In this document: piece after piece, positions 10,336-50,983 of the stretch
Position numbering within the stretch: the stretch's first letter is position 1
How the letters are laid out: every line of letters starts with the position of its first letter
Virus record (IMG/VR): IMGVR_UViG_3300044974_001280
Location: 124,001 to 188,000 of that record
Strand: one strand, 5' to 3'
DNA length: 64,000 nucleotides
Position numbers and translations under genes: made by a program
The notes under the pieces: generated by a model
Databases searched by the model: none
What the model saw: the letters and a program-made list of their open reading frames with translations, nothing else
What the model was told of the DNA's origin: nothing

Positions 10336-10728
10336 ATGAGAGAAAGACTTATTCAAGAAGATTATGTAGAAGAACCCTGGAGAATGCTGGTCTGCTGCAT
10401 TCTTCTTAACCAGACCTCAAACCAGCAAGTCCGAAAAGTGCTCCCTGACGTTTTTTCTTTCGTGCCCGATCCTGACACTGCCGTAAATTGTGATGTTGAT
10501 CAGCTGATTCAGTTGATCAAAAGCACCGGCTTTTCTCGGGTCAAAGCCCAAAGAATTATTCAGATGAGCCACAAATGGCTAGAGGGGTTTCATCAAGTTT
10601 CAGAACTGCCAGGTGTGGGCAGATATGCCCACGACTCCTGGAAAATTTTCATCCAAAAAATGAGAGATCTAGAGGTGACCGATAAAAAATTGGCCAAGTT
10701 TTTAGAGGAGGTTCGGTTGGATATATAA
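10336..10728 (+). CDS. MBD4-like HhH-GPD DNA glycosylase
   Basis: LIQE...PWRMLVCCILLNQT, HhH LPGVGRYAHDSWKIF, DKKL. Confidence 0.8.
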   Translation: MRERLIQEDYVEEPWRMLVCCILLNQTSNQQVRKVLPDVFSFVPDPDTAVNCDVDQLIQLIKSTGFSRVKAQRIIQMSHKWLEGFHQVSELPGVGRYAHDSWKIFIQKMRDLEVTDKKLAKFLEEVRLDI

Positions 10729-10731
10729 GAG

Positions 10732-12429
10732 GTGGGCAATGTCATTAAATCCCAGATAGTTACCAGGGACACCAAAAATTTACTCAACTACACAACTTGG
10801 GTAGCTGGGAATAGCTCAGCTACTGGTTTCTCCAGAAATGGCGGGGCAGCAGAGAATCTACTGGTAAACGGTCTGGACCCTTGGGGCAACGAAACGGTTT
10901 TGTGGTTGTCACTACCCGACGGAGGTGGAAATGATGACGGAGGTTGGAACACGACAAATTTTTCTATAGATCACACTAAGCTCTATCGTTTTTCTGTGTG
11001 GGTAAAAAGGACAGTGTATGTGGAGGGTCGGTTCTATTTTGGAACAAATGGATTTGGTTCTACTAATGGAGTTTTAAGTCGTTCCACCGGAACAAACAAC
11101 ACTAACCCCTATTTTTGGACGTCGTCTGATCCGCCAACTACAGCCGAGATGCCTAACAGCACCTGGATTTTAGTGGTTGGACACGTTTGGCCATCTGGAT
11201 CGGGGACTGGAGCTAACAAACCAGAATCTGGCAGATATACTATTGGCTTGGGTAGATATGCTGGTATTTCTCTAGATTTCGTCTGGCGAACAGAATCTAC
11301 CCAGGCTAGACACAGAACTTATCTATACTATGCAGAGAGCAACTTACCTAGACAATATTGGTGTTACCCTAGAGTCGATATTGTAGATGGAACCGAGCCT
11401 ACCATAGCCCAATTATTGGGCGGATATGGCGCTTTGTCTTCTGTCTCTCTCCAAAAAAGCAATTTTTTATTAGGCCCTTCGGATACTGTTTCCTATTATG
11501 AAACATCACAGGGTGGGTATTGGAACGGTATCCTTCCGGCTTCCGGTGGTTACACGATTTATCTGGGTAATCCTGCCACAGCGGGGGCTTCTGCCTCACC
11601 CCCTGTTATTTACACTGCATCAAGCGGTAATGATTTAGTGACTGTGTCTGGCGTTGTGTTCAGAAATACTTTTAGTTCAGCCAGCGACGTATTGAGCTGG
11701 GCTGCTCCTCAGAACGACATTCTGATCGTTAACCGAGAATACGAGCCGATAGTTACTTCCGGTTTGGTACTAAATCTAGATGCGGGATTTACCCCTTCTT
11801 ATCCCACGACTGGAACAACCTGGTACGATCTGAGTGGGAATGGATTTAATGGCACTTTAGTTAACTCTCCAACTTATTCTTCGAATGAAGGAGGAATAAT
11901 CACATTCGATGGGATCAATGACTACGTGGAAATAGCGGACGCGACAAGTTTGAATTTTGGAACCGGAGGTTTTACAATTCTTATGTGGGTGGGTGGAATA
12001 CCTTCTTATCCTGGTTCCGCTAAAACTATAATTAGAAAGGGAAGCAGATTCGACGGTAACGTGGCGGGATGGTCTATTGTATGGGCGGGAAGTCCTCAGG
12101 ATTTGTATTTTATTATCAGCAGTTCTACGGCAAGACTGGAAGGAAGAACAAGTCCAAATGGTGGTTTGAACGGCTGGAGTGGATATAAATTAATTGGTGT
12201 CCAAAGAAGTGGAACCAATTGGAATCAAATCAACAACACCACAGTTACAACTTTAGGAACATTTAGCGGAGATGTAAACAACACATTGCCGATCACAATT
12301 TCATACAATTCACAGTATGCGTCATATCTAAATCAACAGGTTGGTATGACCTTGATTTACAATAGAGCTCTTAGCTCAGCTGAAATTACACAAGTTTACA
12401 ATGCCACAAAAGCCAGATATGGCTTATAA
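10732..12429 (+). CDS. Virion-associated lectin-like (LamG/ConA) domain protein
   Basis: G/T/S-rich; IVTSGLVLNLDAG...WYDLSGNG...FDGINDYV...IYNRALS..EI..VYNATKARYGL; GATATATA 4 nt upstream. Confidence 0.75.
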   Translation: MGNVIKSQIVTRDTKNLLNYTTWVAGNSSATGFSRNGGAAENLLVNGLDPWGNETVLWLSLPDGGGNDDGGWNTTNFSIDHTKLYRFSVWVKRTVYVEGRFYFGTNGFGSTNGVLSRSTGTNNTNPYFWTSSDPPTTAEMPNSTWILVVGHVWPSGSGTGANKPESGRYTIGLGRYAGISLDFVWRTESTQARHRTYLYYAESNLPRQYWCYPRVDIVDGTEPTIAQLLGGYGALSSVSLQKSNFLLGPSDTVSYYETSQGGYWNGILPASGGYTIYLGNPATAGASASPPVIYTASSGNDLVTVSGVVFRNTFSSASDVLSWAAPQNDILIVNREYEPIVTSGLVLNLDAGFTPSYPTTGTTWYDLSGNGFNGTLVNSPTYSSNEGGIITFDGINDYVEIADATSLNFGTGGFTILMWVGGIPSYPGSAKTIIRKGSRFDGNVAGWSIVWAGSPQDLYFIISSSTARLEGRTSPNGGLNGWSGYKLIGVQRSGTNWNQINNTTVTTLGTFSGDVNNTLPITISYNSQYASYLNQQVGMTLIYNRALSSAEITQVYNATKARYGL

Positions 12430-12433
12430 CTCT

Positions 12434-12760
12434 CTATTTACTTTCCGTTTTGGCCTTGCCAGATAGAGTCTCATGAATTCTCTGTTTTACGTACTTTAGC
12501 ACTTTCTTAGAATCTTTGTGGTCTTTTGAAAGCATTTTTTGAAATTCTTCTTCCTCTGCTAACTCGTCTAGATACGAATACAAGTCAGTTGTGTTGTAGA
12601 GATCGTCAACTACCTGGGGCATCTGAGTGTAGGCTGGACGATAATTTCTGGAGTTAACGTTGTCTTTATACCAATCACCTGGCACTACCACACTCCCTGG
12701 AGCGAAGGCGCTCCAGCTTTCGGATAAAAATTTTTTGAAACTTTTAATACGGGGGGTCAT
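12434..12760 (-). CDS. Hypothetical protein with capsid-targeting-like N-terminus
   Basis: Probable start MTPRIKSFKKFLSE at 12760, GATATATA on minus strand at 12766-12773. Confidence 0.65.
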   Translation of the reverse strand: MTPRIKSFKKFLSESWSAFAPGSVVVPGDWYKDNVNSRNYRPAYTQMPQVVDDLYNTTDLYSYLDELAEEEEFQKMLSKDHKDSKKVLKYVKQRIHETLSGKAKTESK

Positions 12761-12806
12761 ATGTGTATATATCCAACTGGAGAAGACAAAAATTGACTTC
12801 GTAATT

Positions 12807-14210
12807 ATGATCATTGATATAGAAAATAAAGGGACTGGTTTAACGGTCTCTACTTTTTCAAAGGAGGGGAATGTTGAATTTGTCAACATTGAAATTCCTG
12901 AGGAAGAAAGATTCGTGTGGGAAATTTGTTCAGCTAGCGATAGGGCCAGAGACACTGTTTGGAAAAATTGGGACGGCAAGCCCATCAAGAAAGTCAAAAA
13001 TCAAAAGTACGACAAATACCGAATAGTTCAACTGTTAGAAGAGAGTGATCGGGATCTAACTGCACCTCTTTGGGAATCTCAAACCCCGAAAAAATATTTC
13101 GTGGACATTGAGGTCGAGATGACTGATGAGCTAGGTGATTCTTTGGACACCTCAAGTGCCAAAAATAGGGTCTTGTCGATCGGTATTGCCACTGACAGAT
13201 GTAAACTGATTGTGTTGGGTTTGGATGAGTTAACCCCCGAGGCACAGGCACAGATTCATGAAGAAGTGAACACCTACCTCGGCAAGATGGGTGATGAATG
13301 GTCTTTCAGATACATGAAATTCGAGTCCGAGTATGATATGATGTACACTTTTTTCAAAGACATTGGAGCCAAAATGTCTCTGATCACCGGCTGGAACTGG
13401 TTTGGTTACGACTGGCCCTATTTGCTTAATCGAGCCAAAAGGCTGGGCATCGATCCCAAGATCATGTCACCCTCTAAATATCTCATCGGTCAGAACCAAA
13501 TTCCGGTTCACTTGCAGATGGTCGACTATCTGGAAATCTACAAAAAATGGGATAGGGTTATCAAAATCAAAGAAAGTAATCGACTGGATTATGTGGCAGA
13601 AAAGGCAACGGGTCTCAAGAAAATTCACTATGATGGCTCTCTCCGAACCTTGTACCAATCAGATTTCAAAAAGTTTATTCTTTACAACGCCATTGACTGT
13701 GCCCTGGTCCATTACATCGATAAAAAATTGGGCACTCTCCTGACTTATTTTAAGATTGCCTGTCTCAACGGGGTCGAGATCGGCAGGGCTTTATCCCCTG
13801 TTTGGTCTACGGAAGTCATTATGCTCCGAAAATTCTTGGCTCGGAAGCAAGTTTTTGTAAATCTCCGCAAAGAAGAAAACCACATCAAATTCACGGGTGG
13901 CTATGTCAAAGAACCCATCCAGGGTCTGCACGAATGGGTTGCCTGTTACGACTTTGCTTCCCTATATCCGAACACAATAGTTCAGTGGGGTCTGTCCCCA
14001 GAAGTTTTCAAGGGTAAGAACATATCTCACTCCCAGGACTCCTGGACCAAAACCTCTTCAGGTTCGTTCTTTGGAGGTGACGACGAGGAGCCCATTCTGA
14101 AATCGATCATTAAAGATCTCTATGCCCAGAGAAGATCGACCAAAGATAAAATGTTGCAATTGCAGATTGAAATTGACAAAATAGAGAAACAATTAAAAAA
14201 CTTAACGTAG
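12807..14210 (+). CDS. Family B DNA polymerase, N-terminal subunit (3'-5' exonuclease, motif A, first fingers helix)
   Basis: ExoI VDIEV, ExoII GWNWFGYDWPY, ExoIII YNAID, GGYV, DFASLYP; ends before motif B. Confidence 0.9.
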   Translation: MIIDIENKGTGLTVSTFSKEGNVEFVNIEIPEEERFVWEICSASDRARDTVWKNWDGKPIKKVKNQKYDKYRIVQLLEESDRDLTAPLWESQTPKKYFVDIEVEMTDELGDSLDTSSAKNRVLSIGIATDRCKLIVLGLDELTPEAQAQIHEEVNTYLGKMGDEWSFRYMKFESEYDMMYTFFKDIGAKMSLITGWNWFGYDWPYLLNRAKRLGIDPKIMSPSKYLIGQNQIPVHLQMVDYLEIYKKWDRVIKIKESNRLDYVAEKATGLKKIHYDGSLRTLYQSDFKKFILYNAIDCALVHYIDKKLGTLLTYFKIACLNGVEIGRALSPVWSTEVIMLRKFLARKQVFVNLRKEENHIKFTGGYVKEPIQGLHEWVACYDFASLYPNTIVQWGLSPEVFKGKNISHSQDSWTKTSSGSFFGGDDEEPILKSIIKDLYAQRRSTKDKMLQLQIEIDKIEKQLKNLT

Positions 14211-14284: not shown

Positions 14285-14767
14285 ATGACAAACCTCAATT
14301 TTCAGACTTGTGCCCATTTAGAGATCAACAACAATTATCAGGAATTAAGAGACCAGGGGGAAGACGCTCTAGCTCTAATTTTTAACCTCCAAAAATCAAT
14401 CCAGGAAGAAGTCTACGGGTACAATTTTGAGGAGATTCAATCTTCGATCAAGAAGTTAAAAGAGTTTATCGACTGGAATGAAGAAGCCATTAGAGACGAG
14501 GATCGGGAATTACAAAACGCCTTGACTGGAATTCACACCTACCCAGCCTGCTGGAAACCCTGGAAGTCCAAACACGCGGAAGCAATGTCCAGATCTCTGG
14601 CTGATTTGACCGAAGATGAACTGAAAGAATTAAGGTACGAATGGATAGATAAACTCCATTTTATGATGAATGAGGCTATTGCCCTGGGTTTAACTCCGGA
14701 ATCCATCACCAATTATTACGTGGCCAAGAACAGACACAACATCGAGAGGCAGGCCAATAATTATTAA
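14285..14767 (+). CDS. T4 gp56-like dCTPase/dUTPase (all-alpha NTP pyrophosphatase)
   Basis: CAHL near N-terminus, WKPWK, EWIDKLHFMMN, KNRHNIERQANNY. Confidence 0.8.
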   Translation: MTNLNFQTCAHLEINNNYQELRDQGEDALALIFNLQKSIQEEVYGYNFEEIQSSIKKLKEFIDWNEEAIRDEDRELQNALTGIHTYPACWKPWKSKHAEAMSRSLADLTEDELKELRYEWIDKLHFMMNEAIALGLTPESITNYYVAKNRHNIERQANNY

Positions 14768-14833
14768 AAAAAACAACCATCCACTTCACTCTAGGGAGAC
14801 CTATCTGTGGAGAAAACCAAAAAAATAACCACC

Positions 14834-16114
14834 ATGCACAATTCAGAAGAAATTCTTCCCAGCGAAAGTCACTTCGTCATTAAGAGAAGTGGGGACAAAG
14901 TTCCTTTCGAAACCCAGAAAATAGAACAGGCGGTCGTCAAGGCAATGCGGAGCGTTAATACAGTGGATCCTGAAATGGCGGCCAGAATTGCAAGATTGAC
15001 CAAAAAAAGCCTCTTTAGAGGTGACAAGAACAGGGTTCCTCACGTAGATGAGGTTCATGATATGGTGGAGAACAAACTGATGGACAACAATCTGAATGAG
15101 GTTGCCAAGGAGTACATCATCTACAGGGCAAAGCACCAACCAAACCTTTTCTCAAAACGCATCAATCTTAAACCTTACGAGTACCCAGAGTTAGTGGAAT
15201 ACGTAGATGCGATCAGGCATTCCTATTGGGTTCACACAGAATTCAATTTCACTTCGGATATTCAGGATTTTAAGGTTTACCTGTCAGAACCAGAGAGGTC
15301 GGCCGTGCAGAGGGCGATGCTGGCCATTTCCCAGATCGAGATTGCAGTTAAAACTTTTTGGGGTGATCTATACAAGAGAATGCCAAAACCGGAGATTGGG
15401 AGTGTCGGTGCAACCTTTGCCGAATCTGAGGTGAGACACGCCGATGCCTATTCCAATCTCATTCAGGTTCTCGGCTTAAACTCCGAATTTGAGAATTTGC
15501 TCGAAGTACCCGCCATCAGAAAAAGAATTAAATATTTGGAGAAATCTATCTCAAATTCAAAATCTGTCGACAACAGAGACTATTTTGAATCCATTGTCCT
15601 TTTTTCGATGTTTGTTGAAAATGTCTCTCTCTTCTCCCAGTTTCTGGTTATTCTTTCTTTCAATAAACACAAGAACATGTTGAAAGGAATTAGCAATGCC
15701 GTAGAGGCAACCTCGAAAGAAGAAAACATCCACGCAGAATTTGGTTTTGATCTGGTGAATTTGATTAAAAAAGAGAATCCTTCTTGGTGGACTCAGGACC
15801 TGGTTGAGGACCTCATTGATGCCACCTTTGAAGCCTATGAAGCAGAGCTTGAAATTGTAGAATGGATTTTCGAAGCAGGAGATCTCGATTTTTTAAGCGC
15901 GGTCGAAACTGTTGAGTTTATCAAACATCGGTTTAATCTTTCTCTGAACGCCATAGGCATTCAAAATATCTTTGAGGTCAAAGAGAATCTGCTAGAAAAA
16001 ACAGAGTGGCTGAATGATGAAATTTTGACCACTAAGCACACCGACTTCTTCAATAAAAGATCCATTAATTACAGCAAAAAATCTAAATCAATTACCGTTA
16101 ACGACTTATTCTAA
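14834..16114 (+). CDS. nrdB: Class I ribonucleotide reductase beta subunit with N-terminal ATP cone (class Id-like)
   Basis: VIKRSG ATP cone; SQIEIAVKTFW, ESEVRHADAY, ENVSLF, EENIH; C-terminal DFF...Y. Confidence 0.9.
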   Translation: MHNSEEILPSESHFVIKRSGDKVPFETQKIEQAVVKAMRSVNTVDPEMAARIARLTKKSLFRGDKNRVPHVDEVHDMVENKLMDNNLNEVAKEYIIYRAKHQPNLFSKRINLKPYEYPELVEYVDAIRHSYWVHTEFNFTSDIQDFKVYLSEPERSAVQRAMLAISQIEIAVKTFWGDLYKRMPKPEIGSVGATFAESEVRHADAYSNLIQVLGLNSEFENLLEVPAIRKRIKYLEKSISNSKSVDNRDYFESIVLFSMFVENVSLFSQFLVILSFNKHKNMLKGISNAVEATSKEENIHAEFGFDLVNLIKKENPSWWTQDLVEDLIDATFEAYEAELEIVEWIFEAGDLDFLSAVETVEFIKHRFNLSLNAIGIQNIFEVKENLLEKTEWLNDEILTTKHTDFFNKRSINYSKKSKSITVNDLF

Positions 16115-16129
16115 AAAAAATAATTATTT

Positions 16130-17839
16130 ATGACAGGGGACAGAAAACCTTTCGACTGGATCAATTGGGAATCCATGACTTTTCTCAAAAGGGGCTATTT
16201 AGCCGAGCATGAAGATCCCGGGGTCCGGGTAAAAGTCATTGCCGATCATGCAGAAAAATTGCTGGGCATGCCCGGATTTTCCGACAAATTCTTTGATTAT
16301 ATGGGCAGAGGATGGTACTCCCTTTCCTCTCCAGTTTGGGCTAATTTTGGGAAAAAAAGAGGTCTCCCCGTTTCTTGCTTTGGTTCTCATCTAATGGACA
16401 ATATCGAGTCTATCCTGTATACCCAAGGAGAAGTAGGTGAAATGAGCAAGATGGGAGGAGGAACTTCAGGTTATTTTGGCAACATCAGAGGTCGAGGAGC
16501 CACGGTCAGTGATAACGGCCACGCCCCAGGGGCAGTCCACTTCATGAACCTTTTTCAGAGTGTGGTGGACAACATCTCCCAGGGCTCGACCAGAAGAGGC
16601 AGATTTTCACCTTATCTGCCCATCGACCATCCGGACATTCTGGAGTTTTTAGACATCGGAACCGAGGGATTTCCCATTCAGGATTTGACCCACGCCGTGA
16701 CGGTCTCTGACGACTTCATGACCAAGATGACCTTGGGAGATCAGGAAAAAAGAGCGGTGTGGGCTAAAGTCATTCAGAGAAGAGGGGAGATAGGTTATCC
16801 CTACATCATGTTTAGCGATACCATGAACTCCAAGTCACCGGATGTTTATCGGGATAAAGATCTTAAAATTTCCAATTCTAATCTTTGTTCTGAGATTGCC
16901 TTGCACAATTCTGATGACGAATCTTTTGTTTGTGTTCTGTCCTCGATGAATTTACTTCATTACGACGAATGGAAAGGCACAGATGCAGTTCAAACCATGG
17001 TCTATTTCTTGGATGCCGTGGTAACGGAATTTCTGACCAAAATAGATAATCTGAGGCAGGACGGCACAGTGGAAGGACAAAGAGCATTCTTTTATTTGTC
17101 TAGAGCCTACAATTTTGCCAAAAGACAGAGAGCTCTGGGTCTAGGTGTATTGGGCTGGCATTCCTTGCTTCAATCCAAATCTCTGCCCTTTGACTGCAAA
17201 GAGAGTGCCCAGTTGAACGTGGAGGTTTTCAAATACATCAAAGATGAATCCTATGCTGCTTCTAGGCAGCTAGCCACCATCTTCGGAGAACCCGAAATGC
17301 TCGTTGGATACGGCCGGAGAAATGTGACTCTGAATGCCATTGCTCCCACCACATCTTCTGCCTTTATTCTAGGCCAGGTTTCTCAGTCTATCGAACCAAT
17401 TTGGTCCAATTGTTTTGTTAAGGATGTCGCCAAGATCAAGGTCTCAATCAAGAATCCGGTTTTGAGAAAATTGCTAGTTGAACTGGATAAAGACACCAAA
17501 TACATCTGGGACAGCATCAAAAAGCACGATGGATCTGTCCAGCATTTCGATTGGTTGACTGACCATCAGAAAGAAGTGTTCAGAACTTTCTCCGAGATCA
17601 ACCAGGCGGCCATTATCAACCAGGCGGCTGTGAGACAGGATTACATCGATCAAGCTCAATCTCTCAATCTGATGATTTCTCCTGAAATGCCAACCAAAGA
17701 CGTGAACAGACTTCTGATCGATGCCTGGAAGCTCGGGATTAAAACTTTGTACTACCAGCATTCTATGAACTCTGCCCAGGCTTTTTCCAGAAAAAAATTA
17801 AATTTAAACGATCTTCAGTGTGTTGCCTGTGAATCTTAA
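16130..17839 (+). CDS. nrdA: Class I ribonucleotide reductase alpha subunit (no ATP cone)
   Basis: SCF, NLCSEI, APTTSS, TLYY, C-terminal CVAC. Confidence 0.95.
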   Translation: MTGDRKPFDWINWESMTFLKRGYLAEHEDPGVRVKVIADHAEKLLGMPGFSDKFFDYMGRGWYSLSSPVWANFGKKRGLPVSCFGSHLMDNIESILYTQGEVGEMSKMGGGTSGYFGNIRGRGATVSDNGHAPGAVHFMNLFQSVVDNISQGSTRRGRFSPYLPIDHPDILEFLDIGTEGFPIQDLTHAVTVSDDFMTKMTLGDQEKRAVWAKVIQRRGEIGYPYIMFSDTMNSKSPDVYRDKDLKISNSNLCSEIALHNSDDESFVCVLSSMNLLHYDEWKGTDAVQTMVYFLDAVVTEFLTKIDNLRQDGTVEGQRAFFYLSRAYNFAKRQRALGLGVLGWHSLLQSKSLPFDCKESAQLNVEVFKYIKDESYAASRQLATIFGEPEMLVGYGRRNVTLNAIAPTTSSAFILGQVSQSIEPIWSNCFVKDVAKIKVSIKNPVLRKLLVELDKDTKYIWDSIKKHDGSVQHFDWLTDHQKEVFRTFSEINQAAIINQAAVRQDYIDQAQSLNLMISPEMPTKDVNRLLIDAWKLGIKTLYYQHSMNSAQAFSRKKLNLNDLQCVACES

Positions 17840-17864: not shown

Positions 17865-18497
17865 ATGGATTTAGTTAAGAATTTCTCAGATTTTTTAATA
17901 GAAAGAGAATTGCCGGATTCTCAAGGAAAAATTCTAGTTGTGATGGGACCTCCGGGATCAGGTAAAGGAACTTTTTCCGAAAAACTGGCAGATAGGCAAG
18001 GCTTCCACCACATTTCAACCGGAGAATTGCTCAGGAAATCAAAAAACCCGGAGATCAAGAAAAAAGTTGAACGGGGTGATTTCATCGACGATCAGACAGT
18101 TGTAAAGATGATCCGGAGGGAACTGAAGAAAATTGATCCTGATGATGGGATCATTATTGACGGATTCCCCCGGACCGTTAAACAAGCCTCTCTGTTAGAT
18201 TCTTTGCTCGGAAAAATGGGCTTGGGCCTGAGCCACACCATCTATCTGGATATAGACGAAGAAACGGCCAAAGGCAGAATTACTGCCAGGGCGGAAAGAG
18301 AAGACCGGAAGGACGACAAAGATCCAGAGGTGGTGGCTAAAAGATTCAGAGACTATGAAGAAAAAACTGCACCCCTGATTGATCTCTACACAAAAAACAG
18401 AAAACTGAAAAAATATAATGCCGCCAAAGGTAGCGAGAGCGTTTACAAGAAGATCGTGAAGGCCTTAGAACTAAACCGGACCCCTGATTCAGAATAA
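17865..18497 (+). CDS. adk: Adenylate kinase with capsid-targeting-like N-terminal extension
   Basis: GPPGSGKGT, HISTGELLR, DGFPRT, short LID R.DD; N-terminus MDLVKNFSDFLIE. Confidence 0.9.
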   Translation: MDLVKNFSDFLIERELPDSQGKILVVMGPPGSGKGTFSEKLADRQGFHHISTGELLRKSKNPEIKKKVERGDFIDDQTVVKMIRRELKKIDPDDGIIIDGFPRTVKQASLLDSLLGKMGLGLSHTIYLDIDEETAKGRITARAEREDRKDDKDPEVVAKRFRDYEEKTAPLIDLYTKNRKLKKYNAAKGSESVYKKIVKALELNRTPDSE

Positions 18498-19295: not shown

Positions 19296-20540
19296 ATGCC
19301 TGAAATTCTGCCAGAAACTGATATTTTTCCAGCTTCACAAGTATCTTCTTCTATCAAACCTAAAGACCCCCGCCAAACATATTCTCTCTGTCTGGTTATG
19401 ATCGTCAAAGACGAGGAGGACACCATTAGAAAATGTCTTACACACGTTGCCCCTTTTATTTCTTATTGGGTCATCTGTGACACAGGTTCCTCTGATAACA
19501 CGGTTCAAGAGATCGAAACTACCATGCAGGATCTAGGAATTCCAGGGGAGCTCCACCACAGGCCTTGGGTTAATTTCGAGGTGAATAGAACAGAAAGCCT
19601 GGAACTCTCCAAAGGAATTTGTGACTACAGATGGATCATTGATGCCGACGACACCTTTACAAACCTTAAACCTGGCACCAATCCTTTCATGGATTTGCCT
19701 GCCGATATAGATTGCTTTCAACTGCAGTATAAATTGAACTCATTGCAGTATTTTAGGGCCCAGATAGTCAGATCTGACCAGGATTGGGTTTATCGGGGAG
19801 TTCTCCACGAGTATTTAGAGCTTCCCGGCAAGGCACCTCTAGTTCAAGCTCAAATACCTGGTGATAGGTGTCTGGTCAATGCTAACATTTCTCCTTTGAA
19901 AAGAGCATCTTCATTGGAAGAAAAATATTCCAAAGATGCGGATATTCTACTTCAGGCTCTGCAGGAAGATCCCAACAACACCCGGTACATGTTTTATCTC
20001 GCCCAAAGTTATCGGGATTCTTCCCAGCACGAAAAATCTCTGACCTGGTATCAAAAAAGAGTTGACGCCGGAGGCTGGCCTGAAGAGGTTTACTACTCGA
20101 TGTACATGATAGGCAGGATCAAAGAAAAACTGGGGCATCCGATTGAAGAAGTTATTACCGCCTATTCTAAAGCCTGGGAATTCCGGCCCGAAAGGTTGGA
20201 GGCAGTTTTTCACTGCATGAGAAAATTAAGGGAGCAAAACAGATGGATTCTATCTTTCACCTACGGAAGCATGGCCCTAAAAAATCCAGGCACCCAAGAT
20301 ATCCTCTTTGTGGAACCTGAAGTTTGGCAGTGGAGACTGCTGGATGAATATTCATTGGCCGCCTTCCAAACCGGAAATCCAGAGATCTCCTACGAGAAAA
20401 TGAAGGCTGTGGTTGAAATGCCAGCTTTTTCTAGCCTAAATCTCCAAGAACAGCAAAGGATCAAAAGAAATTTGGATAATTTCAGGGGAGCGGCAGCCCA
20501 AAAATTAAAAATACAGCAAGAACAGGCAAGAAACAAATAA
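19296..20540 (+). CDS. GT2-family glycosyltransferase with TPR domain
   Basis: LCLVMIVKDE, DTGSSD, DADD, GVLHE; TPR-like C-half; GAAAT-N17-TATAAT at 19253-19280. Confidence 0.85.
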   Translation: MPEILPETDIFPASQVSSSIKPKDPRQTYSLCLVMIVKDEEDTIRKCLTHVAPFISYWVICDTGSSDNTVQEIETTMQDLGIPGELHHRPWVNFEVNRTESLELSKGICDYRWIIDADDTFTNLKPGTNPFMDLPADIDCFQLQYKLNSLQYFRAQIVRSDQDWVYRGVLHEYLELPGKAPLVQAQIPGDRCLVNANISPLKRASSLEEKYSKDADILLQALQEDPNNTRYMFYLAQSYRDSSQHEKSLTWYQKRVDAGGWPEEVYYSMYMIGRIKEKLGHPIEEVITAYSKAWEFRPERLEAVFHCMRKLREQNRWILSFTYGSMALKNPGTQDILFVEPEVWQWRLLDEYSLAAFQTGNPEISYEKMKAVVEMPAFSSLNLQEQQRIKRNLDNFRGAAAQKLKIQQEQARNK

Positions 20541-24142: not shown

Positions 24143-24156
24143 GCCCTTATATATCT

Positions 24157-24939: not shown

Positions 24940-24952
24940 GCCTTATATATCT

Positions 24953-45366: not shown

Positions 45367-45399
45367 GAAACTTTTGTGTAATTTCTTATAGAAATTCGA

Positions 45400-45846
45400 A
45401 AGGCGTAGTTCTGCTTCAAAAAAAATTAAAAATTATGGCAATACTTTATTTTCTTTTAGGTGCGCTTACCGTGGTGGTCTTGGTCACCGTGGCGGGTGTG
45501 TTTAAGATGAATTCGGATTTAGACCGAAAAATCAGAACCAAAATCTCCGACCACATCGAATCGGTCATGAAAGAGATTGAAATTACAAGGAACAATTTAC
45601 ACTCCGATGATTCTTACATCCACAATCGGATCGATGAAGTTCTCGACGAAATCAATAAACGAGAAGAAGTCGGAATCAGATCGGGAAGAGAACAATTTGA
45701 ATCTCTACAAAAGCAGTTGGATTCCAGATGCGATAAGCTCTGGGCTCAGGTGAATGCAAATTACGAGTTGAGCCAAATGAGGTTCAACGATATTTCAAAC
45801 AAAAAAAATTCCCAGACAGAGGGATAAAATCGCAGAACTACGCCTT
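45400..45846. repeat. Perfect 15-bp inverted repeat bracketing one gene
   Basis: AAGGCGTAGTTCTGC (45400-45414) and GCAGAACTACGCCTT (45832-45846). Confidence 0.85.
45435..45827 (+). CDS. Membrane-anchored coiled-coil protein
   Basis: N-terminal TM MAILYFLLGALTVVVLVTVAGVF then heptad-rich region. Confidence 0.7.
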   Translation: MAILYFLLGALTVVVLVTVAGVFKMNSDLDRKIRTKISDHIESVMKEIEITRNNLHSDDSYIHNRIDEVLDEINKREEVGIRSGREQFESLQKQLDSRCDKLWAQVNANYELSQMRFNDISNKKNSQTEG

Positions 45847-45858
45847 GAATTATTTATT

Positions 45859-46839
45859 ATGAATTATCCATTTAAAAAAATTTTCATTATAAATTGTTTT
45901 CCTTCTAGTGACTACCATTTACAAATTCTGAAAGAATGTATTGTCAGACTCAAGGGGCTTGACTACAAACTGATGGTTGTTTCACATTTACCTCTGCCCC
46001 TTGATGTGCAGAAGGAAATAGACTATTTTATTTATGATTCAGAAAATCCACTCTTAGGATCCCATTCATTCAGTTGGTTTGCTAATTCTTTTATTAAGGC
46101 AACTCTGTGGAACATAGGTCACATGCTTGCTATCTGTAAAAATATGGACACTAGTATTTCTGCCGCCCACCGAATGGGCTATGAGTATTTCTATTTTTTG
46201 GAATGTGACAATTTAATTTCTGAAAAAGATCTTTCTACTTTTGATAATTTTCTGCAAGAAATGATTCATGCCGAAAAAAAAATGATCTTTCATAGATACC
46301 AATTTAACGAGGGTTACAATTATCACACTCTCTTGTTTGGAGGAAATGCTGAATATTTTGTGCAGAAAATCAAATTACCCACAAATTATGATGCCTATCA
46401 TGCCTTTAATATCACTGGTATTCTCGAAAGAGATTTTTATGAGCATTTGGGTGTAAATGAATCTGATTTTTTGATTAAGGAATGTTACGAAGATGGTGCT
46501 ATGGAAGGATTTAGAACTAGCGAGATGAATAGAATTTCCGCTATTGGGATAGTGTGTGAAGTCCTCCCATCTCAAACTGGCTACTATCTTTTTTTAATGA
46601 ACAACACCTCAAGAGAAATAATATATTACGTCGGAGAGAATCAAATTGTTCTTACACTTGGGGGTTATTGGTACTGCCCAGCCTCTGAAAAAATGGAAGT
46701 TCGAATCGTGGATGGCAAATATTCCTTAGAAAAAAGATTCGAATTGACCGAAGAGAACGAAAAGTTTTACAGTGCCAAAGGATTTTTAGAACTGTATGAG
46801 TTTGCAGATTTAAACGGCGGATATGGTTCTATCTATTAA
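45859..46839 (+). CDS. Putative glycosyltransferase-like protein
   Basis: VSHLP...YFIYD..N N-terminus shared with 51922 and 56052; ECD motif. Confidence 0.4.
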   Translation: MNYPFKKIFIINCFPSSDYHLQILKECIVRLKGLDYKLMVVSHLPLPLDVQKEIDYFIYDSENPLLGSHSFSWFANSFIKATLWNIGHMLAICKNMDTSISAAHRMGYEYFYFLECDNLISEKDLSTFDNFLQEMIHAEKKMIFHRYQFNEGYNYHTLLFGGNAEYFVQKIKLPTNYDAYHAFNITGILERDFYEHLGVNESDFLIKECYEDGAMEGFRTSEMNRISAIGIVCEVLPSQTGYYLFLMNNTSREIIYYVGENQIVLTLGGYWYCPASEKMEVRIVDGKYSLEKRFELTEENEKFYSAKGFLELYEFADLNGGYGSIY

Positions 46840-46853
46840 TTTAATATCTCTTC

Positions 46854-47060
46854 TTACAGGCCATTCAATCTGGAGATCTCCTGTTTTAGCTGCGAAACCA
46901 CCAAAGTGTGATGCTCTTCTAATTTTTCCAGCTCTTTATTTAGATCTTCTACATGAGCTTTTAACCGACCGAGAATTTCACTCTTTTTCTCAGGGTCTTG
47001 GTTCAGCTCCAGATCTAGAATTAAATTCTTGATCCGATTGGTCCACTTGTTAACTTCCAT
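46854..47060 (-). CDS. Small coiled-coil protein
   Basis: 68-aa ORF with A-rich upstream region. Confidence 0.5.
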   Translation of the reverse strand: MEVNKWTNRIKNLILDLELNQDPEKKSEILGRLKAHVEDLNKELEKLEEHHTLVVSQLKQEISRLNGL

Positions 47061-47148
47061 TGTTTTTTTTTACAAATTTAAGAAATAATTCGAAATCATT
47101 TCTTTCTTTTTCATAAAAGGTCCATATTTAATTTGACTGACAAATCTC

Positions 47149-47535
47149 TTGGAACCACCTATTATATATCATGTACCCTCCTGCGATGAGTGCAACATCC
47201 CTAAAGGATGGGGTCATGAGGTTGTCTTCGAAAATAACGAACTGTATTGTGGAAAACTTCTATGTTTTAAGGGAGGAGCCAAATTTTCAATGCACTATCA
47301 TTTGATCAAAGATGAAACTTGGTACGTAAAGGAAGGCACTTTTATTTATCGGTATATAGACACCCGCAACGCAGAAGTGGTTGAAAAAAATTTAATAGAA
47401 GGTGATTCGGTCAGACAAATGCCCGGCCAACCACATCAACTGGAAGCAATAACGGATGGGATAATCTTCGAGGTTTCCACCCAACACTTTGACGAGGATT
47501 CTTATCGTGTTTGGAAAGGTGATTCACAAAAATAG
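47149..47535 (+). CDS. Cupin, sugar-isomerase-like
   Basis: KGWGHE...YCGKLL...SMHYH..KDETWY...PGQPH...EVST. Confidence 0.75.
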   Translation: MEPPIIYHVPSCDECNIPKGWGHEVVFENNELYCGKLLCFKGGAKFSMHYHLIKDETWYVKEGTFIYRYIDTRNAEVVEKNLIEGDSVRQMPGQPHQLEAITDGIIFEVSTQHFDEDSYRVWKGDSQK

Positions 47536-47552
47536 AAATTGAGTAGAGAAAA

Positions 47553-48338
47553 ATGAGCTCCGTTACCGTCATAATTCCAAATTACAACTTCTCTGAATTT
47601 CTTGATACGACTCTTTTTTCCGTTTTTTCGCAGATCACCAATTTCGACGTGCAAGTATTAGTGGGGGATGATTCTTCTCAAGATCAGAGCGCTGGTATTT
47701 TAACACGGTTCAAAAAATTTTACGGGCAGGACAAATTCGACTTTTTTATCAACACAGAAAATAAGGGAGAAGTAGAAACAGTTAAAAGATTACTTTCTAA
47801 AGCTAAAGGAAATTATATAGCCTATCTTGATGGTGATGACTATTGGATAGATCCTTATAAATTACAGAAACAATTTGATTTTCTTGAGAGTAATCCAGAA
47901 TTTTCCGCGTCTTCTACCGGTTATTTAACTTTAGAAGGAGAGTATGGATTTTGTCCACATCCAGAAGGAGATTTATTTTTTGGAGTTCCCGAAGAATTTA
48001 TGGATAAAAATTTCACCTCCCCTGAATTTATTTCTACCGGCAGGAACTGTGTATATGCATCCTCCCGTTTTTTTAGAAATTATGAGGATCTTTTTCAGCC
48101 TTACTTTTTCGAATTTCCGTATTCAGATTGGCCCATGAATTATGAATTAAGCTTAAGGGGTAAGATTAACTACGATCATTACCCTAGCTACATTTATAGG
48201 AAACATTCGAATTCTTTAACTCATCCTAAAGAAATAGAAAAAGTGGATGAAACAAGTGAAAAAGAATGGCTTGATCAAAAGTCCCTGATTTTTACCAGGA
48301 GAAAAGAAGAATTTCAGAAAAATCAGAATAAACAATAG
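47553..48338 (+). CDS. GT2-family glycosyltransferase
   Basis: VIIPNYN, GDDSSQD, YLDGDDYW...KLQKQ. Confidence 0.9.
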   Translation: MSSVTVIIPNYNFSEFLDTTLFSVFSQITNFDVQVLVGDDSSQDQSAGILTRFKKFYGQDKFDFFINTENKGEVETVKRLLSKAKGNYIAYLDGDDYWIDPYKLQKQFDFLESNPEFSASSTGYLTLEGEYGFCPHPEGDLFFGVPEEFMDKNFTSPEFISTGRNCVYASSRFFRNYEDLFQPYFFEFPYSDWPMNYELSLRGKINYDHYPSYIYRKHSNSLTHPKEIEKVDETSEKEWLDQKSLIFTRRKEEFQKNQNKQ

Positions 48339-48343
48339 AATCA

Positions 48344-48592
48344 ATGGAGACGAAAAATCACATTATTAATTCTCTCAAAAAAAGGCATCAGCTTTACACT
48401 GGATTACACGATGAGCAAATTAAGAAAGATCACCTCTGGGTGCTGAACCATCCCTTAAAAGGCTCGGTTAAAAAAGAATGGACTGATTTTGGGGTAAATT
48501 TAATTATGGCTGAAATGGGCTTGGATCAGAGATCCGCCGAGATTGAGATGTCTTTCTTGGAGCAAGAGTACGAATCTTTAGCCTCTAGATAG
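48344..48592 (+). CDS. Hypothetical protein
   Basis: 82-aa ORF. Confidence 0.5.
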   Translation: METKNHIINSLKKRHQLYTGLHDEQIKKDHLWVLNHPLKGSVKKEWTDFGVNLIMAEMGLDQRSAEIEMSFLEQEYESLASR

Positions 48593-48635
48593 GTTCACGA
48601 CACCCAGATTGGATATATAAAGGAAAAAATATCCA

Positions 48636-49223
48636 ATGCTATCAAGAATTTTACTTTTTGTCCTTTTTTTTCCTTTTTGTACATATTCACAAAGAGCATC
48701 TGTAGCGGTTAATGCGGGGGAATACTCTCTCGTTTACTCTGAAATATATCAGCAACCTCTAGAATTATCATACTCGGTCAGATGTACTGCGGCAAAGGAG
48801 AGCAGACAAGGATTGGATTTTTACCGGGTTGATTCCATCATTACCTCTGATCATGCGGATTACGAAAAGAATATCTGGGACAAAGGGCACCTAGCCCCGG
48901 CGGCTACTTTCAGTTGTTCTAAGGAGTCACTAGTAAGAACTTTCTCCTACCTCAACTGTGCTCTCCAACACCAAGATTTAAATCGGGGGGTTTGGAGAAT
49001 TTTAGAGGCCAAAGAGAGACAATTGGTAGCAGAATTTCATCAGGTCGACGTTCTCATTAAACTAGATTTTTCAGGGTCTCCTGAAAAATTAAGTACGGGA
49101 GCAACAGTTCCAACTGGTTTTTGGAAAATCCTAACCATCGACAAGAAAGAAAAAATAACTTATTATTTTCCAAATCGTAAGCCGGCCTTTACAGATCCTA
49201 AAAAATTTCAAATAGCAAATTAA
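48636..49223 (+). CDS. Secreted DNA/RNA non-specific endonuclease (NucA/His-Me finger)
   Basis: Signal peptide; DKGHLAP, N...Q...LNRGVW..LE, VPTGFWK; GATATATA 48612-48619. Confidence 0.85.
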   Translation: MLSRILLFVLFFPFCTYSQRASVAVNAGEYSLVYSEIYQQPLELSYSVRCTAAKESRQGLDFYRVDSIITSDHADYEKNIWDKGHLAPAATFSCSKESLVRTFSYLNCALQHQDLNRGVWRILEAKERQLVAEFHQVDVLIKLDFSGSPEKLSTGATVPTGFWKILTIDKKEKITYYFPNRKPAFTDPKKFQIAN

Positions 49224-49450: not shown

Positions 49451-49464
49451 GATTTCTTCTCTTC

Positions 49465-49488
49465 AACCCAGCTTCGGCTGGGTTTTTT
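49465..49488 (+). terminator. Rho-independent terminator
   Basis: AACCCAGC-TTCG-GCTGGGTT followed by T run. Confidence 0.85.
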
Positions 49489-49513
49489 GTGATTAATTTA
49501 CAAATTTGAACTT

Positions 49514-50146
49514 ATGCATAGATCAGAAGTGATCAATCAGATTATCAGTACCAAAAAATTTAGCACCTACTTGGAGATAGGAGTAAGATGGCCTGAGGAT
49601 TGTTACGATTTAATTCAATGCGAAGAGAAATCTGGGGTCGATCCAGGTCTAGAAAATCCTGAAAATCCGGTCAAGTATCCGTTTACCTCTGATGAATTTT
49701 TTTCCAGGCTAGAAAATAATCTGTTGGATTTACCTCCTGATTATGAGTGGGATCTTATTTTTATCGACGGATTACACCTTTCTTACCAGGTAGAAAAAGA
49801 CATCTTAAATTCTTTGAATCACTTGACAGAAGAGGGAGTTATAGTTCTTCATGATTGTGATCCTTTTATGTATGAAGTAAATTACATTCGGGTCATCGAA
49901 GATTATCTTGGAGTAGCATGGAATGGAACAGTTTGGAAAACTATCTATAAGTTAAAGGCAACCAGGCCAGATCTGAATATTTGTACTGTTAATACCGACG
50001 AAGGTGTTGGACTGATCAAAAGGGAAAGCCAAGAGCTCGTTCCTTTCGATAACCCATATTTTGAGTATAAAATTTTCCAGCAAAATAGAACCAGAGATTT
50101 GAATTTAATTTCCCCTGAAAAAATATCTTCCTGGATTTTAGATTGA
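49514..50146 (+). CDS. Class I SAM-dependent methyltransferase (Methyltransf_24-like)
   Basis: YLEIGV, GVDP, DLIFIDGLH, IVLHD. Confidence 0.8.
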   Translation: MHRSEVINQIISTKKFSTYLEIGVRWPEDCYDLIQCEEKSGVDPGLENPENPVKYPFTSDEFFSRLENNLLDLPPDYEWDLIFIDGLHLSYQVEKDILNSLNHLTEEGVIVLHDCDPFMYEVNYIRVIEDYLGVAWNGTVWKTIYKLKATRPDLNICTVNTDEGVGLIKRESQELVPFDNPYFEYKIFQQNRTRDLNLISPEKISSWILD

Positions 50147-50206
50147 AACTTAAAATCCATCGAAAACTAATTCAGATTAGGCCGTATAATTTGAAAATTC
50201 ATCCCA

Positions 50207-50983
50207 TTGAAAACATTTCAAAAGCCCTCACAAGCCATCAAGTGGGCTAAGGAAAAATTGATCGATCACGGATATGTCGTACAGACCGAGAGATGGCAGG
50301 GTATACCTTCCCCTGACGACATGTGGGAAACCTTAAATACTTCTTTCTCTATGTTTGTCCCCCACACACTCGAAGAACTACGTGATGAGGTCAGACCTAA
50401 TCTTCCCTGGGCGGACGATCATTTTGAAGAAAGAATCGGGGGCCAGCCGCTGAATCCACCTCCTTCTAACGAATGGTGGCCTTTCAACCAAAAGAAGAAT
50501 TCCCAATTCAAAACAGAGGAGAAATTTTCTCACACTTATCCAGAAAGACTCTGGCCTAAATTTGCATCAGAAGAACCCAATTCGACCATGTTTGGCATTA
50601 GGTACAACTACGGTGACTTTGGTGATGTGATTGATTTGTTGGCAAGAGAACCTTTCACTAGACAGGCTTTTCTGCCCCTGTGGTTCCCGGAAGACACTGG
50701 ATCTGTCCACGGGGAACGAGTTCCTTGTACAATCGGCTATCATTTTATGAGAAGAGCGGATTATCTACACATCGTGTATTACATCAGGTCCTGTGACTAT
50801 CTCCGCCACTTTAGAGACGATATCTATATGGCTTGTCGGAAAGTTTTTTGGGTTCTAGAAAAATTGAGGGAAAGAAATCCCGAATCCTGGGGCGAGGTTA
50901 AACCTGGATTTTTTACCATGCACATCACTTCTTTGCATTGTTTCAATAAGGAGAAAGAAGTTCTAAGACAAAATAATAAATAA
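50207..50983 (+). CDS. Thymidylate-synthase homologue, probable dCMP hydroxymethylase/methylase
   Basis: TRQA, VPC catalytic Cys, RSCDYLRHFRDD, ITSLH. Confidence 0.75.
   Translation: MKTFQKPSQAIKWAKEKLIDHGYVVQTERWQGIPSPDDMWETLNTSFSMFVPHTLEELRDEVRPNLPWADDHFEERIGGQPLNPPPSNEWWPFNQKKNSQFKTEEKFSHTYPERLWPKFASEEPNSTMFGIRYNYGDFGDVIDLLAREPFTRQAFLPLWFPEDTGSVHGERVPCTIGYHFMRRADYLHIVYYIRSCDYLRHFRDDIYMACRKVFWVLEKLRERNPESWGEVKPGFFTMHITSLHCFNKEKEVLRQNNK

What the first reader, a model, noticed from the sequence alone, without database searches (positions are those of the whole stretch)
10336..50983. Dispersed pathway for a substituted-cytosine genome
Seen: the TS homologue (50207) reads RSCDYLRHFRDD. This aligns with E. 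coli ThyA RSCDVFLGLPFN and T4 gp42 RSNDVVFGFRND, putting Asp at the specificity position. A gp56-like dCTPase (14285) follows the polymerase gene, and an MBD4-like glycosylase (10336) is present. Established: Asn selects dUMP and Asp selects dCMP; T4 uses gp42 plus gp56 to replace C with hmC; MBD4 removes T/U/hmU opposite G, the deamination products of (h)mC. Inference: the DNA contains 5mC or 5hmC, possibly further glycosylated, since the TS-like gene sits inside a sugar-transferase island. The H in place of the conserved G suggests an atypical subfamily.
Basis: partly seen in the sequence, partly recalled or inferred. Interest (0 to 1): 0.7.

Follow-up and report, generated by a model that had tools for sequence, protein, structure and literature searches.

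The report
Cytosine-modifying toolkit in lake jumbo phage
A 230-kb freshwater phage carries, beside an ordinary thymidylate synthase, a second enzyme of the same fold whose active site is set for cytosine rather than uracil, together with T4-like helper genes, so its DNA probably holds a chemically altered cytosine whose nature cannot yet be named.

Summary
All three sequence observations hold. Window 50207-50983 encodes a thymidylate-synthase-fold protein (AF2 pLDDT 96.5). Its RSCDYLRHFRDD motif aligns without gaps to E. coli ThyA and T4 gp42, putting Asp at the Asn177/Asp179 specificity position. Window 14285-14767 is a true gp56 homologue directly after the N-terminal half of a split PolB. 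Window 10321-10728 is an MBD4-type glycosylase.

The genome also has a canonical ThyA with Asn177, a dCMP deaminase and an adenylate-kinase-family NMP kinase. It has no ThyX, trimeric dUTPase, UDG, C5-methyltransferase or TET. Five complete relatives (250-434 kb) keep ThyA(Asn), the TS-like protein and the gp56-like protein.

The TS-like protein belongs to a large, mostly viral clade that includes Mycobacterium phage Muddy gp46. The clade has near-invariant Cys, Asp177, Arg at Leu143 and His at Gly173. It therefore fails the T4 hydroxymethylase and 5-hydroxy-dCMP synthase signatures and is only remotely related to Xp12's methylase.

A pre-replicative cytosine C5 modification is likely (about 0.55). 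Specifically 5mC or 5hmC is not shown. Glycosylation is suggested only by analogy: the sugar island is accessory, but the cultured relative PAU has a hydroxylase-type TS paralogue inside a sugar cluster.

The parts
50207..50983 (+). TS-superfamily paralogue (258 aa) with catalytic Cys174, Arg194-Ser195, Asp197 (= Ec D169) and Asp205 (= Ec N177 / T4 D179). Family-specific residues are Arg171 (= Ec L143), His201 (= G173), Arg200, His109 and Thr175 (= H147).
14285..14767 (+). gp56-family all-alpha NTP pyrophosphatase (dCTPase/dUTPase type), directly after the PolB N-terminal half.
   Evidence: conserved in 5 of 5 relatives; same PolB-N then gp56-like order in phage PAU
10321..10728 (+). MBD4-type HhH-GPD mismatch glycosylase (ATG at 10336).
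   Evidence: present in 4 of 5 relatives in the same position relative to the gp56-like gene; no UDG in the record
12660..14210 (+). Family B DNA polymerase, N-terminal half (exonuclease domain plus start of the polymerase domain).
35672..36826 (+). Family B DNA polymerase, C-terminal half (separate gene 21 kb away).
   Evidence: the same 382-aa gene lies near the TS-like gene in relatives
14807..17839 (+). Ribonucleotide reductase small subunit (with ATP-cone) and large subunit.
17865..18497 (+). Adenylate-kinase / UMP-CMP-kinase family NMP kinase. It is the candidate kinase for the modified dCMP, by analogy with T4 gp1.
   Evidence: the role is inferred
19296..20540 (+). Core GT2 + TPR glycosyltransferase, 63-66% identical in 5 of 5 relatives. 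It was considered as a DNA glycosyltransferase but resembles peptide glycosyltransferases.
45435..49223 (+). Accessory sugar/nuclease genes upstream of the TS-like gene: an unknown gene at 45859, cupin at 47149, GT2 at 47553, and Endonuclease_NS with a signal-like N-terminus at 48636.
49514..50146 (+). Methyltransf_24-type methyltransferase immediately upstream of the TS-like gene.
50991..58700 (+). Accessory sugar island downstream of the TS-like gene: FkbM methyltransferase, an unknown gene, GT2, DegT/ArnB-like NDP-sugar aminotransferase, a GNAT-like gene (read by eye only, 54988-55392), CmcI-type methyltransferase and three unknown genes.
   Evidence: accessory status

Best explanation
The window belongs to a roughly 230-kb freshwater jumbo phage. 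It is related to the Bacteroidota phages PAU and MA9V-1 and to huge uncultured phages. The phage runs a T4/Xp12-style pre-replicative pathway for a C5-modified cytosine. Proposed steps follow. (1) The gp56-like pyrophosphatase turns dCTP (and dUTP) into the monophosphate; this is inferred. (2) The TS-like enzyme attacks C6 of dCMP with Cys174, reads the cytosine N3/N4 face with Asp205, and transfers a group to C5. The residues are shown; the chemistry and product are inferred. (3) The adenylate-kinase-family NMP kinase and host NDP kinase make the triphosphate, and the split PolB incorporates it; this is inferred. (4) The canonical ThyA(Asn177) and the dCMP deaminase keep dTTP supply separate. 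(5) The MBD4-type glycosylase removes T or 5-substituted U opposite G that arises when the modified cytosine deaminates; this is inferred. The product is undetermined. 5-methyl-dCMP is the simplest guess. The T4-type hydroxymethylase and 5-hydroxy-dCMP synthase signatures are not met, and the invariant Arg171/His201/Arg200/His109 set fits no characterised class. The flanking sugar genes are an accessory island whose link to DNA is unproven.
For: Asp at the specificity position is shown by four alignment methods and is near-invariant in the family. The TS fold is predicted with high confidence. Catalytic Cys, Arg166/Ser167, Asp169, Tyr94 and Trp80 equivalents are kept. Thr at H147 is shared with T4 gp42 and RB69 gp48, and Phe at Y209 with RB69 gp48. 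A canonical ThyA with Asn177 exists in this genome and in 5 of 5 complete relatives, which all also keep the TS-like and gp56-like genes. The genome has a dCMP deaminase with the HAE/PCxxC motifs and an NMP kinase beside RNR. In four unrelated small-phage lineages (Muddy, Zuko, Serbin, P744) the same TS-like family sits in a cassette: thymidylate kinase, dUTPase_2/MazG-type pyrophosphatase, an unknown gene, the TS-like gene, dCMP deaminase and PolA. This mirrors the TS + deaminase + PRA-PH + PolA neighbourhoods that MetaGPA tied to cytosine-modified contigs (bioRxiv 10.1101/2024.12.05.627091). The cultured relative PAU has the same PolB-N then gp56-like order, a ThyA(Asn), and a second TS homologue with the full 5hodCMP-synthase signature. 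N177D as the dCMP determinant is established (PMC8670742, PMC13326640, PMC6400193).
Against: There is no chemical or read-level evidence. Only assembled contigs of lake metagenomes were served and no nanopore run was listed. The gp56-like protein is the only dUTPase-type enzyme found, so it need not be a dCTPase. The equivalent of the universal Glu58 is ambiguous: Asn/Asp65 by hhalign, Asp/Glu70 by MAFFT. Arg127 is replaced by Gln. Folate-dependent transfer is therefore not assured. Carriers such as Muddy are much studied, yet my searches found no report of modified DNA in them. The record is about 85% complete.
Confidence: 0.55

Rival explanations
1. The TS-like enzyme does act on dCMP, but its product is then deaminated by the dCMP-deaminase-family enzyme. 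In that case it feeds the thymine pool, or a 5-substituted uracil pool. Virion DNA would carry no modified cytosine, or would carry a modified T instead.
For: In small phages the TS-like gene is next to a dCMP/cytidine deaminase. Xp12-type phages make dTTP by deaminating 5mdCTP, and several such deaminases convert 5hmdC to 5hmdU. This genome has a homologous deaminase.
Against: This phage and 5 of 5 relatives already have ThyA(Asn177) for dTMP. The deaminase lies about 148 kb from the TS-like gene and looks like an ordinary dCMP deaminase. In Xp12 the deamination route coexists with full 5mC substitution, so it does not exclude modified C.
Confidence: 0.15
2. It is simply a very divergent thymidylate synthase acting on dUMP, and the gp56-like protein is the phage dUTPase. 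This is ordinary dTTP supply, as the public annotations of homologues assume.
For: Homologues are annotated 'thymidylate synthase' and are read as thymine synthesis genes in announcements. The cassette of kinase, dUTPase, TS and deaminase equals the classical dTMP route. There is no trimeric dUTPase in the record.
Against: Asp, not Asn, sits at position 177 in 91 of 93 representatives, and N177D switches TS to dCMP (PMC8670742). A canonical ThyA coexists in 6 of 6 jumbo genomes examined. Gln replaces Arg127, and Arg, His and His replace Leu143, Gly173 and Pro92.
Confidence: 0.08
3. The TS-like enzyme serves the surrounding sugar/methyl island. It would be a MilA-like enzyme modifying CMP or a nucleotide-sugar, for a surface glycan, virion glycan or small molecule rather than for DNA.
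For: The best Foldseek match is MilA, a CMP hydroxymethylase. The gene lies between methyltransferases, GT2 enzymes and an ArnB-like aminotransferase. Tyr209, which contacts the 3'-OH, is Phe.
Against: The gene is a backbone gene kept by relatives that lack the island. There it sits beside PolB-C, RNase HII, UvsX and DnaB genes. In small phages it sits in a nucleotide/replication cassette. Foldseek scores to MilA, TS, AfhB and dCH are nearly equal.
Confidence: 0.07

Closest known systems
Phage T4 hydroxymethylcytosine pathway (gp42 dCMP hydroxymethylase, gp56 dCTPase/dUTPase, gp1 kinase, cd, td, alpha/beta-gt)
   Same: It shares the TS-fold enzyme with Cys and Asp at the specificity position and the F-R-(N/D)-D motif. 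It has a gp56 homologue (29% identity), a separate td-type ThyA (also interrupted by an endonuclease-like ORF), a dCMP deaminase and RNR. In T4 gene 42 is adjacent to beta-gt.
   Different: Arg replaces Asp145 and His replaces Ser94, both needed for hydroxymethylation (PMC6400193). Identity to gp42 is only 24% over 120 residues. The kinase is of the adenylate-kinase family, not gp1. No GT-B alpha/beta-gt homologue was identified.
Xanthomonas phage Xp12 dCMP methyltransferase with 5mC-selective deaminase
   Same: It has Asp177 and Asp169. The TS-deaminase adjacency is seen in the small-phage carriers of the family. The Xp12 protein gives the highest family-HMM score among the characterised enzymes compared (47.5 bits).
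   Different: The Xp12 enzyme is ThyA-like (G-L-P-Y-D, Gly173 kept) and 25% identical over 154 residues. It belongs to a different clade.
5-hydroxy-dCMP synthases (RB69 gp48, DLP3 gp80, HY126 AfhB; flavin-dependent)
   Same: It shares the TS fold, Asp177, Thr at 147 and Phe at 209. These genes are embedded in sugar clusters. The relative PAU carries one (gp182).
   Different: The diagnostic D169N is absent here (Asp197 in 89 of 93). Position 143 is Arg, not Glu.
MilA CMP 5-hydroxymethylase (mildiomycin pathway)
   Same: It is the best Foldseek match (TM 0.70-0.72), is cytosine-specific and has Asp at 177 (PMC13326640).
   Different: Identity is 13%. MilA is a bacterial secondary-metabolism enzyme with acidic residue 143 and a ribonucleotide substrate.

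Membership tests
Thymidylate synthase superfamily (fold) | TS alpha/beta fold | tested here: met
   AF2 pLDDT 96.5, pTM 0.93. Foldseek probability 1.0 and TM 0.65-0.72 to MilA, TS, AfhB and T4 dCH, and to archaeal and bacterial TS in AFDB.
Thymidylate synthase superfamily (fold) | Catalytic Cys (Ec C146), phosphate-binding Arg166/Ser167, and Tyr94 | tested here: met
   Cys174 in 91 of 93, Arg194 in 92 of 93, Ser195 in 87 of 93, Tyr111 in 92 of 93.
Thymidylate synthase superfamily (fold) | Pfam PF00303 gathering score | tested here: not met
   18.8 bits against a cut-off of 24.3. PHROG 160 matches at 9e-26.
Folate-dependent TS / dCMP hydroxymethylase chemistry | General-acid Glu (Ec E58 / T4 E60) and pterin-binding Asp169 | tested here: inconclusive
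   Asp197 is kept (89 of 93). The Glu58 equivalent is Asn/Asp65 by hhalign or Asp/Glu70 by MAFFT. Glu75 is invariant nearby.
Canonical thymidylate synthase (dUMP to dTMP) | Asn at Ec position 177 | tested here: not met
   Asp205. The genome's true ThyA has Asn.
dCMP-specific TS homologues | Asp at Ec position 177 | tested here: met
   Asp205 in 91 of 93 family representatives.
T4-type dCMP hydroxymethylase | Asp/Glu three residues before the catalytic Cys (T4 D145) and Ser/Thr two before Tyr96 (T4 S94) | tested here: not met
   Arg171 (92 of 93) and His109 (86 of 93). The rule is from PMC6400193.
5-hydroxy-dCMP synthase | D169N, with acidic residue 143 | tested here: not met
   Asp197 and Arg171. 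The rule is from PMC13326640.
dCMP methyltransferase (Xp12 type) | Close sequence relation to a proven 5mdCMP synthase | tested here: not met
   25% identity over 154 aa and 47.5 bits to the family HMM. The activity itself was not testable here.
gp56 dCTPase/dUTPase family | Full-length homology with aligned acidic metal-binding motifs | tested here: met
   29% identity, E 3e-25 to T4 gp56. About 1,460 phage homologues, mostly Tevenvirinae.
gp56 dCTPase/dUTPase family | Hydrolysis of dCTP | not testable with these tools
   It is the only dUTPase-type gene in the record, so a dUTPase-only role cannot be excluded.
MBD4-type mismatch glycosylase | HhH-GPD domain with catalytic Asp, nearest to the MBD4 glycosylase domain | tested here: met
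   E 6e-14 to 4ew4/3iho over residues 9-127. Pfam HhH-GPD scores 39 bits. Substrate range was not testable.
Phage DNA glycosyltransferase system | A glycosyltransferase conserved together with the base-modifying enzyme and resembling known DNA glycosyltransferases | tested here: inconclusive
   The core GT2-TPR resembles the SunS/ThuS peptide glycosyltransferases. The island GT2 enzymes are accessory. GT-A DNA glycosyltransferases do exist.

The most novel reading that the evidence does not exclude
[quoted passage not shown] It comprises thousands of mostly viral proteins, usually labelled 'thymidylate synthase' and mostly below Pfam's cut-off. On this reading it acts on dCMP but installs a C5 group other than methyl, hydroxymethyl or hydroxyl, or uses a different cofactor or co-substrate. 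The clue is its invariant basic set: Arg at L143, His at G173, Arg at L172 and His at P92. If so, this lake jumbo-phage lineage and cultured phages such as Muddy, Zuko and Serbin would carry a cytosine derivative not yet described.
Probability: 0.25. Interest if true: 0.85.

Novelty: new variant of a known kind. Interest (0 to 1): 0.6.

Why it matters
Pre-replicative pyrimidine modification by TS homologues is the root of most known phage DNA hypermodifications. Each new clade has so far given a new base: 5hmC, 5hmU, 5mC and, in 2025-26, 5hoC. This clade is large. It has at least 4,875 members at 90% clustering, 304 clusters at 50% identity with E below 1e-10, and 563 confirmed IMG/VR loci. 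It is mostly viral and largely escapes Pfam-threshold screens. It is present in cultured, tractable phages, including the therapeutic phage Muddy. If it makes a modified cytosine, that bears on restriction and CRISPR evasion, on sequencing and engineering of those phages, and on enzyme discovery. In abundant freshwater jumbo phages of probable Bacteroidota hosts it would be a lineage-wide trait.

Tried and rejected
(1) The core GT2-TPR gene (19296-20540) as the DNA glycosyltransferase. It is conserved in 5 of 5 relatives, but its model matches the SunS/ThuS peptide S-glycosyltransferases and giant-virus GT2 enzymes. It was not adopted.

(2) Island position as evidence of glycosylation. Synteny shows the TS-like gene is a backbone gene and the sugar genes are insertions that differ even in a relative whose TS-like protein is 93% identical. 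This is kept only as a possibility, by analogy with PAU, RB69 and DLP3.

(3) Xp12-type identity. The Xp12 TS was fetched and is a different, ThyA-like clade.

(4) Read-level evidence of modification. Only Logan contigs of lake metagenomes hold the phage and no nanopore run was listed. Read laying was not used because contigs cannot show base modification.

(5) Composition. CpG observed/expected is 0.65 and palindrome avoidance is mild (GGCC 0.76, TGCA 0.77). This does not discriminate between the readings.

(6) Group I intron in the split ThyA. There was no Rfam match at E up to 0.01.

(7) Literature on this clade. Searches of papers and of the eLife MetaGPA supplements for its motifs found nothing.

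(8) The upstream partner genes of small phages (Muddy gp47, Serbin gp51) as a second TS-fold paralogue. This was suggested by C...RS/RT motifs and by P744's 'pyrimidine hmase synthase' label, but hhalign gave under 1% probability.

(9) No homologue was found in the record of C5 DNA methyltransferase, TET/JBP, ThyX, trimeric dUTPase or UDG.

Full report
**What the window is.** The window is bases 124,001-188,000 of a 230,445-bp IMG/VR viral record, linear and about 85% complete. It is 96% coding and almost all genes lie on one strand. Its family B DNA polymerase is split into two genes, 12660-14210 and 35672-36826. The N-terminal half is nearest to huge uncultured phages, the Lak phages and Chryseobacterium phage MA9V-1. 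The same sequence occurs in at least 19 lake-water metagenome runs. The nearest cultured relative by local synteny is the jumbo phage PAU. PAU's host is really a Sphingobacterium, a Bacteroidetes (PMC3738902). A freshwater jumbo phage of a Bacteroidota host is the likely setting; the host is an inference.

**Check of the observation.** The ORF at 50207-50983 (258 aa) contains RSCDYLRHFRDD.
- I fetched E. coli thyA, and the standard numbering holds.
- Four methods were used: BLASTP, hhalign of an 81-sequence family alignment to gp42 and to the genome's own ThyA, a family HMM against E. coli ThyA, and an L-INS-i alignment.
- All four place Asp205 on Ec Asn177 / T4 Asp179, His201 on Gly173, Asp197 on Asp169, Cys174 on Cys146, Thr175 on His147 and Arg171 on Leu143.
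- Pfam scores the protein below its cut-off (18.8 against 24.3 bits). The AlphaFold model is nevertheless excellent (pLDDT 96.5).
- The model matches MilA, bacterial and human TS, the HY126 dCMP hydroxylase AfhB and T4 dCH at TM 0.65-0.72 and 12-16% identity.
- The gp56-like gene (14285-14767) aligns end to end with T4 gp56 (29% identity, E 3e-25) and follows the PolB N-terminal half.
- The 10321-10728 product is closest to MBD4 glycosylase domains (E 6e-14) and keeps the catalytic Asp.

**The rest of the gene set.**
- A canonical ThyA lies outside the window at G000 220086-222191. It is split by a 323-aa endonuclease-like ORF and reads ...RSVDTFLGLPFN, so it has Asn177. There is no ThyX.
- A dCMP deaminase with HAE/PCxxC motifs lies at G000 26124-26732.
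- In the window, RNR subunits and an adenylate-kinase/UMP-CMP-kinase-family NMP kinase follow the gp56-like gene.
- No trimeric dUTPase, UDG, C5 DNA methyltransferase or TET/JBP was found.
- Five complete relatives of 250-434 kb all have a canonical ThyA with Asn177, the TS-like gene and the gp56-like gene. Four of the five have the MBD4-like gene in the same place.

The TS-like protein is therefore an extra, conserved enzyme and not the dTMP synthase.

**The family.**
- The protein has at least 4,875 homologues at 90% clustering and 304 clusters at 50% identity with E below 1e-10.
- There are 563 confirmed IMG/VR loci, and the Atlas clusters are mostly to entirely viral.
- Across 93 representatives the near-invariant residues are Cys174, Arg194, Ser195, Asp197 and Asp205, plus the family-specific Arg171, Arg200, His201, His109, Glu75, Arg76 and His244.
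- Isolates with 38-47% identical homologues, all annotated 'thymidylate synthase', include Mycobacterium phage Muddy (gp46), Streptomyces phage Zuko, Serratia phage Serbin, Yersinia phage P744 and some 80 Gordonia phages.
- In those four lineages the gene sits in one cassette: thymidylate kinase, dUTPase_2/MazG-type pyrophosphatase, an unknown protein, the TS-like gene, a dCMP/cytidine deaminase and PolA.
- That arrangement mirrors the TS + deaminase + PRA-PH + PolA neighbourhoods that MetaGPA associated with cytosine-modified contigs, and the Xp12 arrangement.

**Which activity?** Published signatures let three classes be tested.
- T4-type hydroxymethylases need Asp/Glu at the Leu143 position and Ser/Thr two residues before Tyr94; D145N is inactive (PMC6400193). 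This family has Arg and His there, so the signature is not met.
- 5-hydroxy-dCMP synthases carry D169N with Glu143 (PMC13326640). This family keeps Asp197, so the signature is not met.
- The proven Xp12 dCMP methylase is a ThyA-like protein (G-L-P-Y-D) only 25% identical to this one.
- Family-HMM scores are similar for all references: Xp12 47.5, RB69 gp48 40.1, E. coli ThyA 34.3 and T4 gp42 30.3 bits. The clade is a deep, separate branch.
- It shares Thr147 with gp42 and gp48, and Phe209 with gp48.
- The Glu58 equivalent is alignment-dependent, so cofactor use cannot be settled here.

My reading is a dCMP C5-transferase of unknown product. 5-methyl is the simplest guess. A new product is a real possibility.

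**The sugar island.**
- Around the gene lie a cupin, two GT2 enzymes, three methyltransferases, an ArnB-like NDP-sugar aminotransferase, a GNAT-like gene (read by eye only) and several unknowns.
- Synteny shows a conserved backbone order in relatives: PolB-C, RimK-type ATP-grasp, the TS-like gene, then the small genes at 58712, 59225 and 61785.
- In those relatives the TS-like gene is flanked instead by a metallophosphoesterase, RNase HII, UvsX-like and DnaB-like genes.
- A relative whose TS-like protein is 93% identical has a partly different island. The island is accessory.
- A core GT2-TPR gene (19296-20540, 63-66% identical in 5 of 5 relatives) looked promising. It models as a SunS/ThuS-like peptide glycosyltransferase.
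- Against dismissing glycosylation: T4 beta-gt abuts gene 42. RB69, DLP3 and RL38JI hydroxylase genes sit in sugar clusters. GT-A DNA glycosyltransferases exist.
- In PAU the second TS homologue, gp182, carries EYPCT / RSNN / ...CFD. That is the full 5hodCMP-synthase signature, and its best reference match is RB69 gp48 (E 1.6e-21).
- PAU gp182 lies among unknown genes of about 390 aa, next to RmlB/RmlC/RmlA-like genes.
- PAU was also already listed as holding a homologue of RB69 ORF53_52c (PMC6024577).

Glycosylation here stays possible, at about 0.2, but unshown.

**Limits.** No chemical or read-level evidence could be obtained. Composition statistics were uninformative. The gp56-like protein may be only a dUTPase. 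I found no paper that characterises this clade.

**Verdict.** A lineage-wide, T4/Xp12-like cytosine-modification toolkit is the best explanation (0.55). The product is unassigned and the enzyme clade appears uncharacterised. It is a new variant of a known kind and a good experimental lead, because cultured carriers exist.

Noticed in passing
L108:6222-6929 (Sphingomonas phage PAU gp182, NC_019521 135221-135928); L103; L106: PAU, the nearest cultured relative, has a second TS homologue with E-Y-P-C-T, R-S-N-N and a terminal Asp. These are L143E, D169N and N177D, the published 5-hydroxy-dCMP synthase signature. It also has a canonical ThyA(Asn) and a gp56-like gene after a split PolB. gp182 sits among four unknown genes of about 390 aa, next to dTDP-sugar genes. 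PAU DNA is therefore predicted to carry glycosylated 5-hydroxycytosine.
   Followed up: partly
L011:3066-8597 (Muddy gp49-gp44); L012, L013, L004: The cassette conserved across Actinobacteria and Proteobacteria siphophages is: thymidylate kinase, dUTPase_2/MazG-type pyrophosphatase, an unknown gene (phrog_13667 or phrog_34294), the TS-like gene (Asp177), dCMP deaminase and PolA. The unknown partner overlaps or abuts the TS-like gene. A TS-fold relation for the partner was not supported by hhalign.
   Followed up: partly
window 12660-14210 and 35672-36826: The family B DNA polymerase is split into two genes 21 kb apart. The same split occurs in relatives and in phage PAU (gp105 / gp110).
   Followed up: partly
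L001:115-2241 (G000 220071-222197, outside the window): The canonical ThyA is split into 105-aa and 266-aa ORFs by a 323-aa endonuclease-like ORF. Another GIY-YIG-like ORF follows. There was no Rfam group I intron match at E up to 0.01, so intron versus split gene is unresolved.
   Followed up: partly
window 23039-25936 (- strand): Three tandem paralogous genes (367, 260 and 327 aa) are built of 63-bp / 21-residue leucine-rich-type repeats (G-A-P-Q-T-V-x-G-x-F-x-C-x-x-N-Q-L-T-S-L) with near-identical N- and C-termini. They lie in a 55% GC patch of a 40% GC genome.
   Followed up: no
window 19296-20540: A core GT2 + TPR glycosyltransferase lies in the nucleotide-metabolism module and is 63-66% identical in all five complete relatives. 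Its model is closest to the SunS/ThuS glycocin S-glycosyltransferases and to giant-virus GT2 enzymes. It may be a protein glycosyltransferase.
   Followed up: partly
window 48636-49223: A DNA/RNA non-specific endonuclease with a signal-peptide-like N-terminus lies 1 kb upstream of the TS-like gene. A 54% identical copy lies 8 kb downstream of the TS-like gene in a 373-kb relative (L036).
   Followed up: no
window 27847-28773; 26048-27835; 31978-33342; 37302-38768; 42327-44792 (-); 59914-60966: Other notable genes are a UvdE UV-damage endonuclease, type II topoisomerase subunits, a RimK-type ATP-grasp ligase, a ClpB-like double-AAA protein and a glutamine-synthetase-like protein.
   Followed up: no
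window 2811-4760: A 649-aa protein has weak RNA-ligase-like and cytidylyltransferase-like Pfam matches.
   Followed up: no
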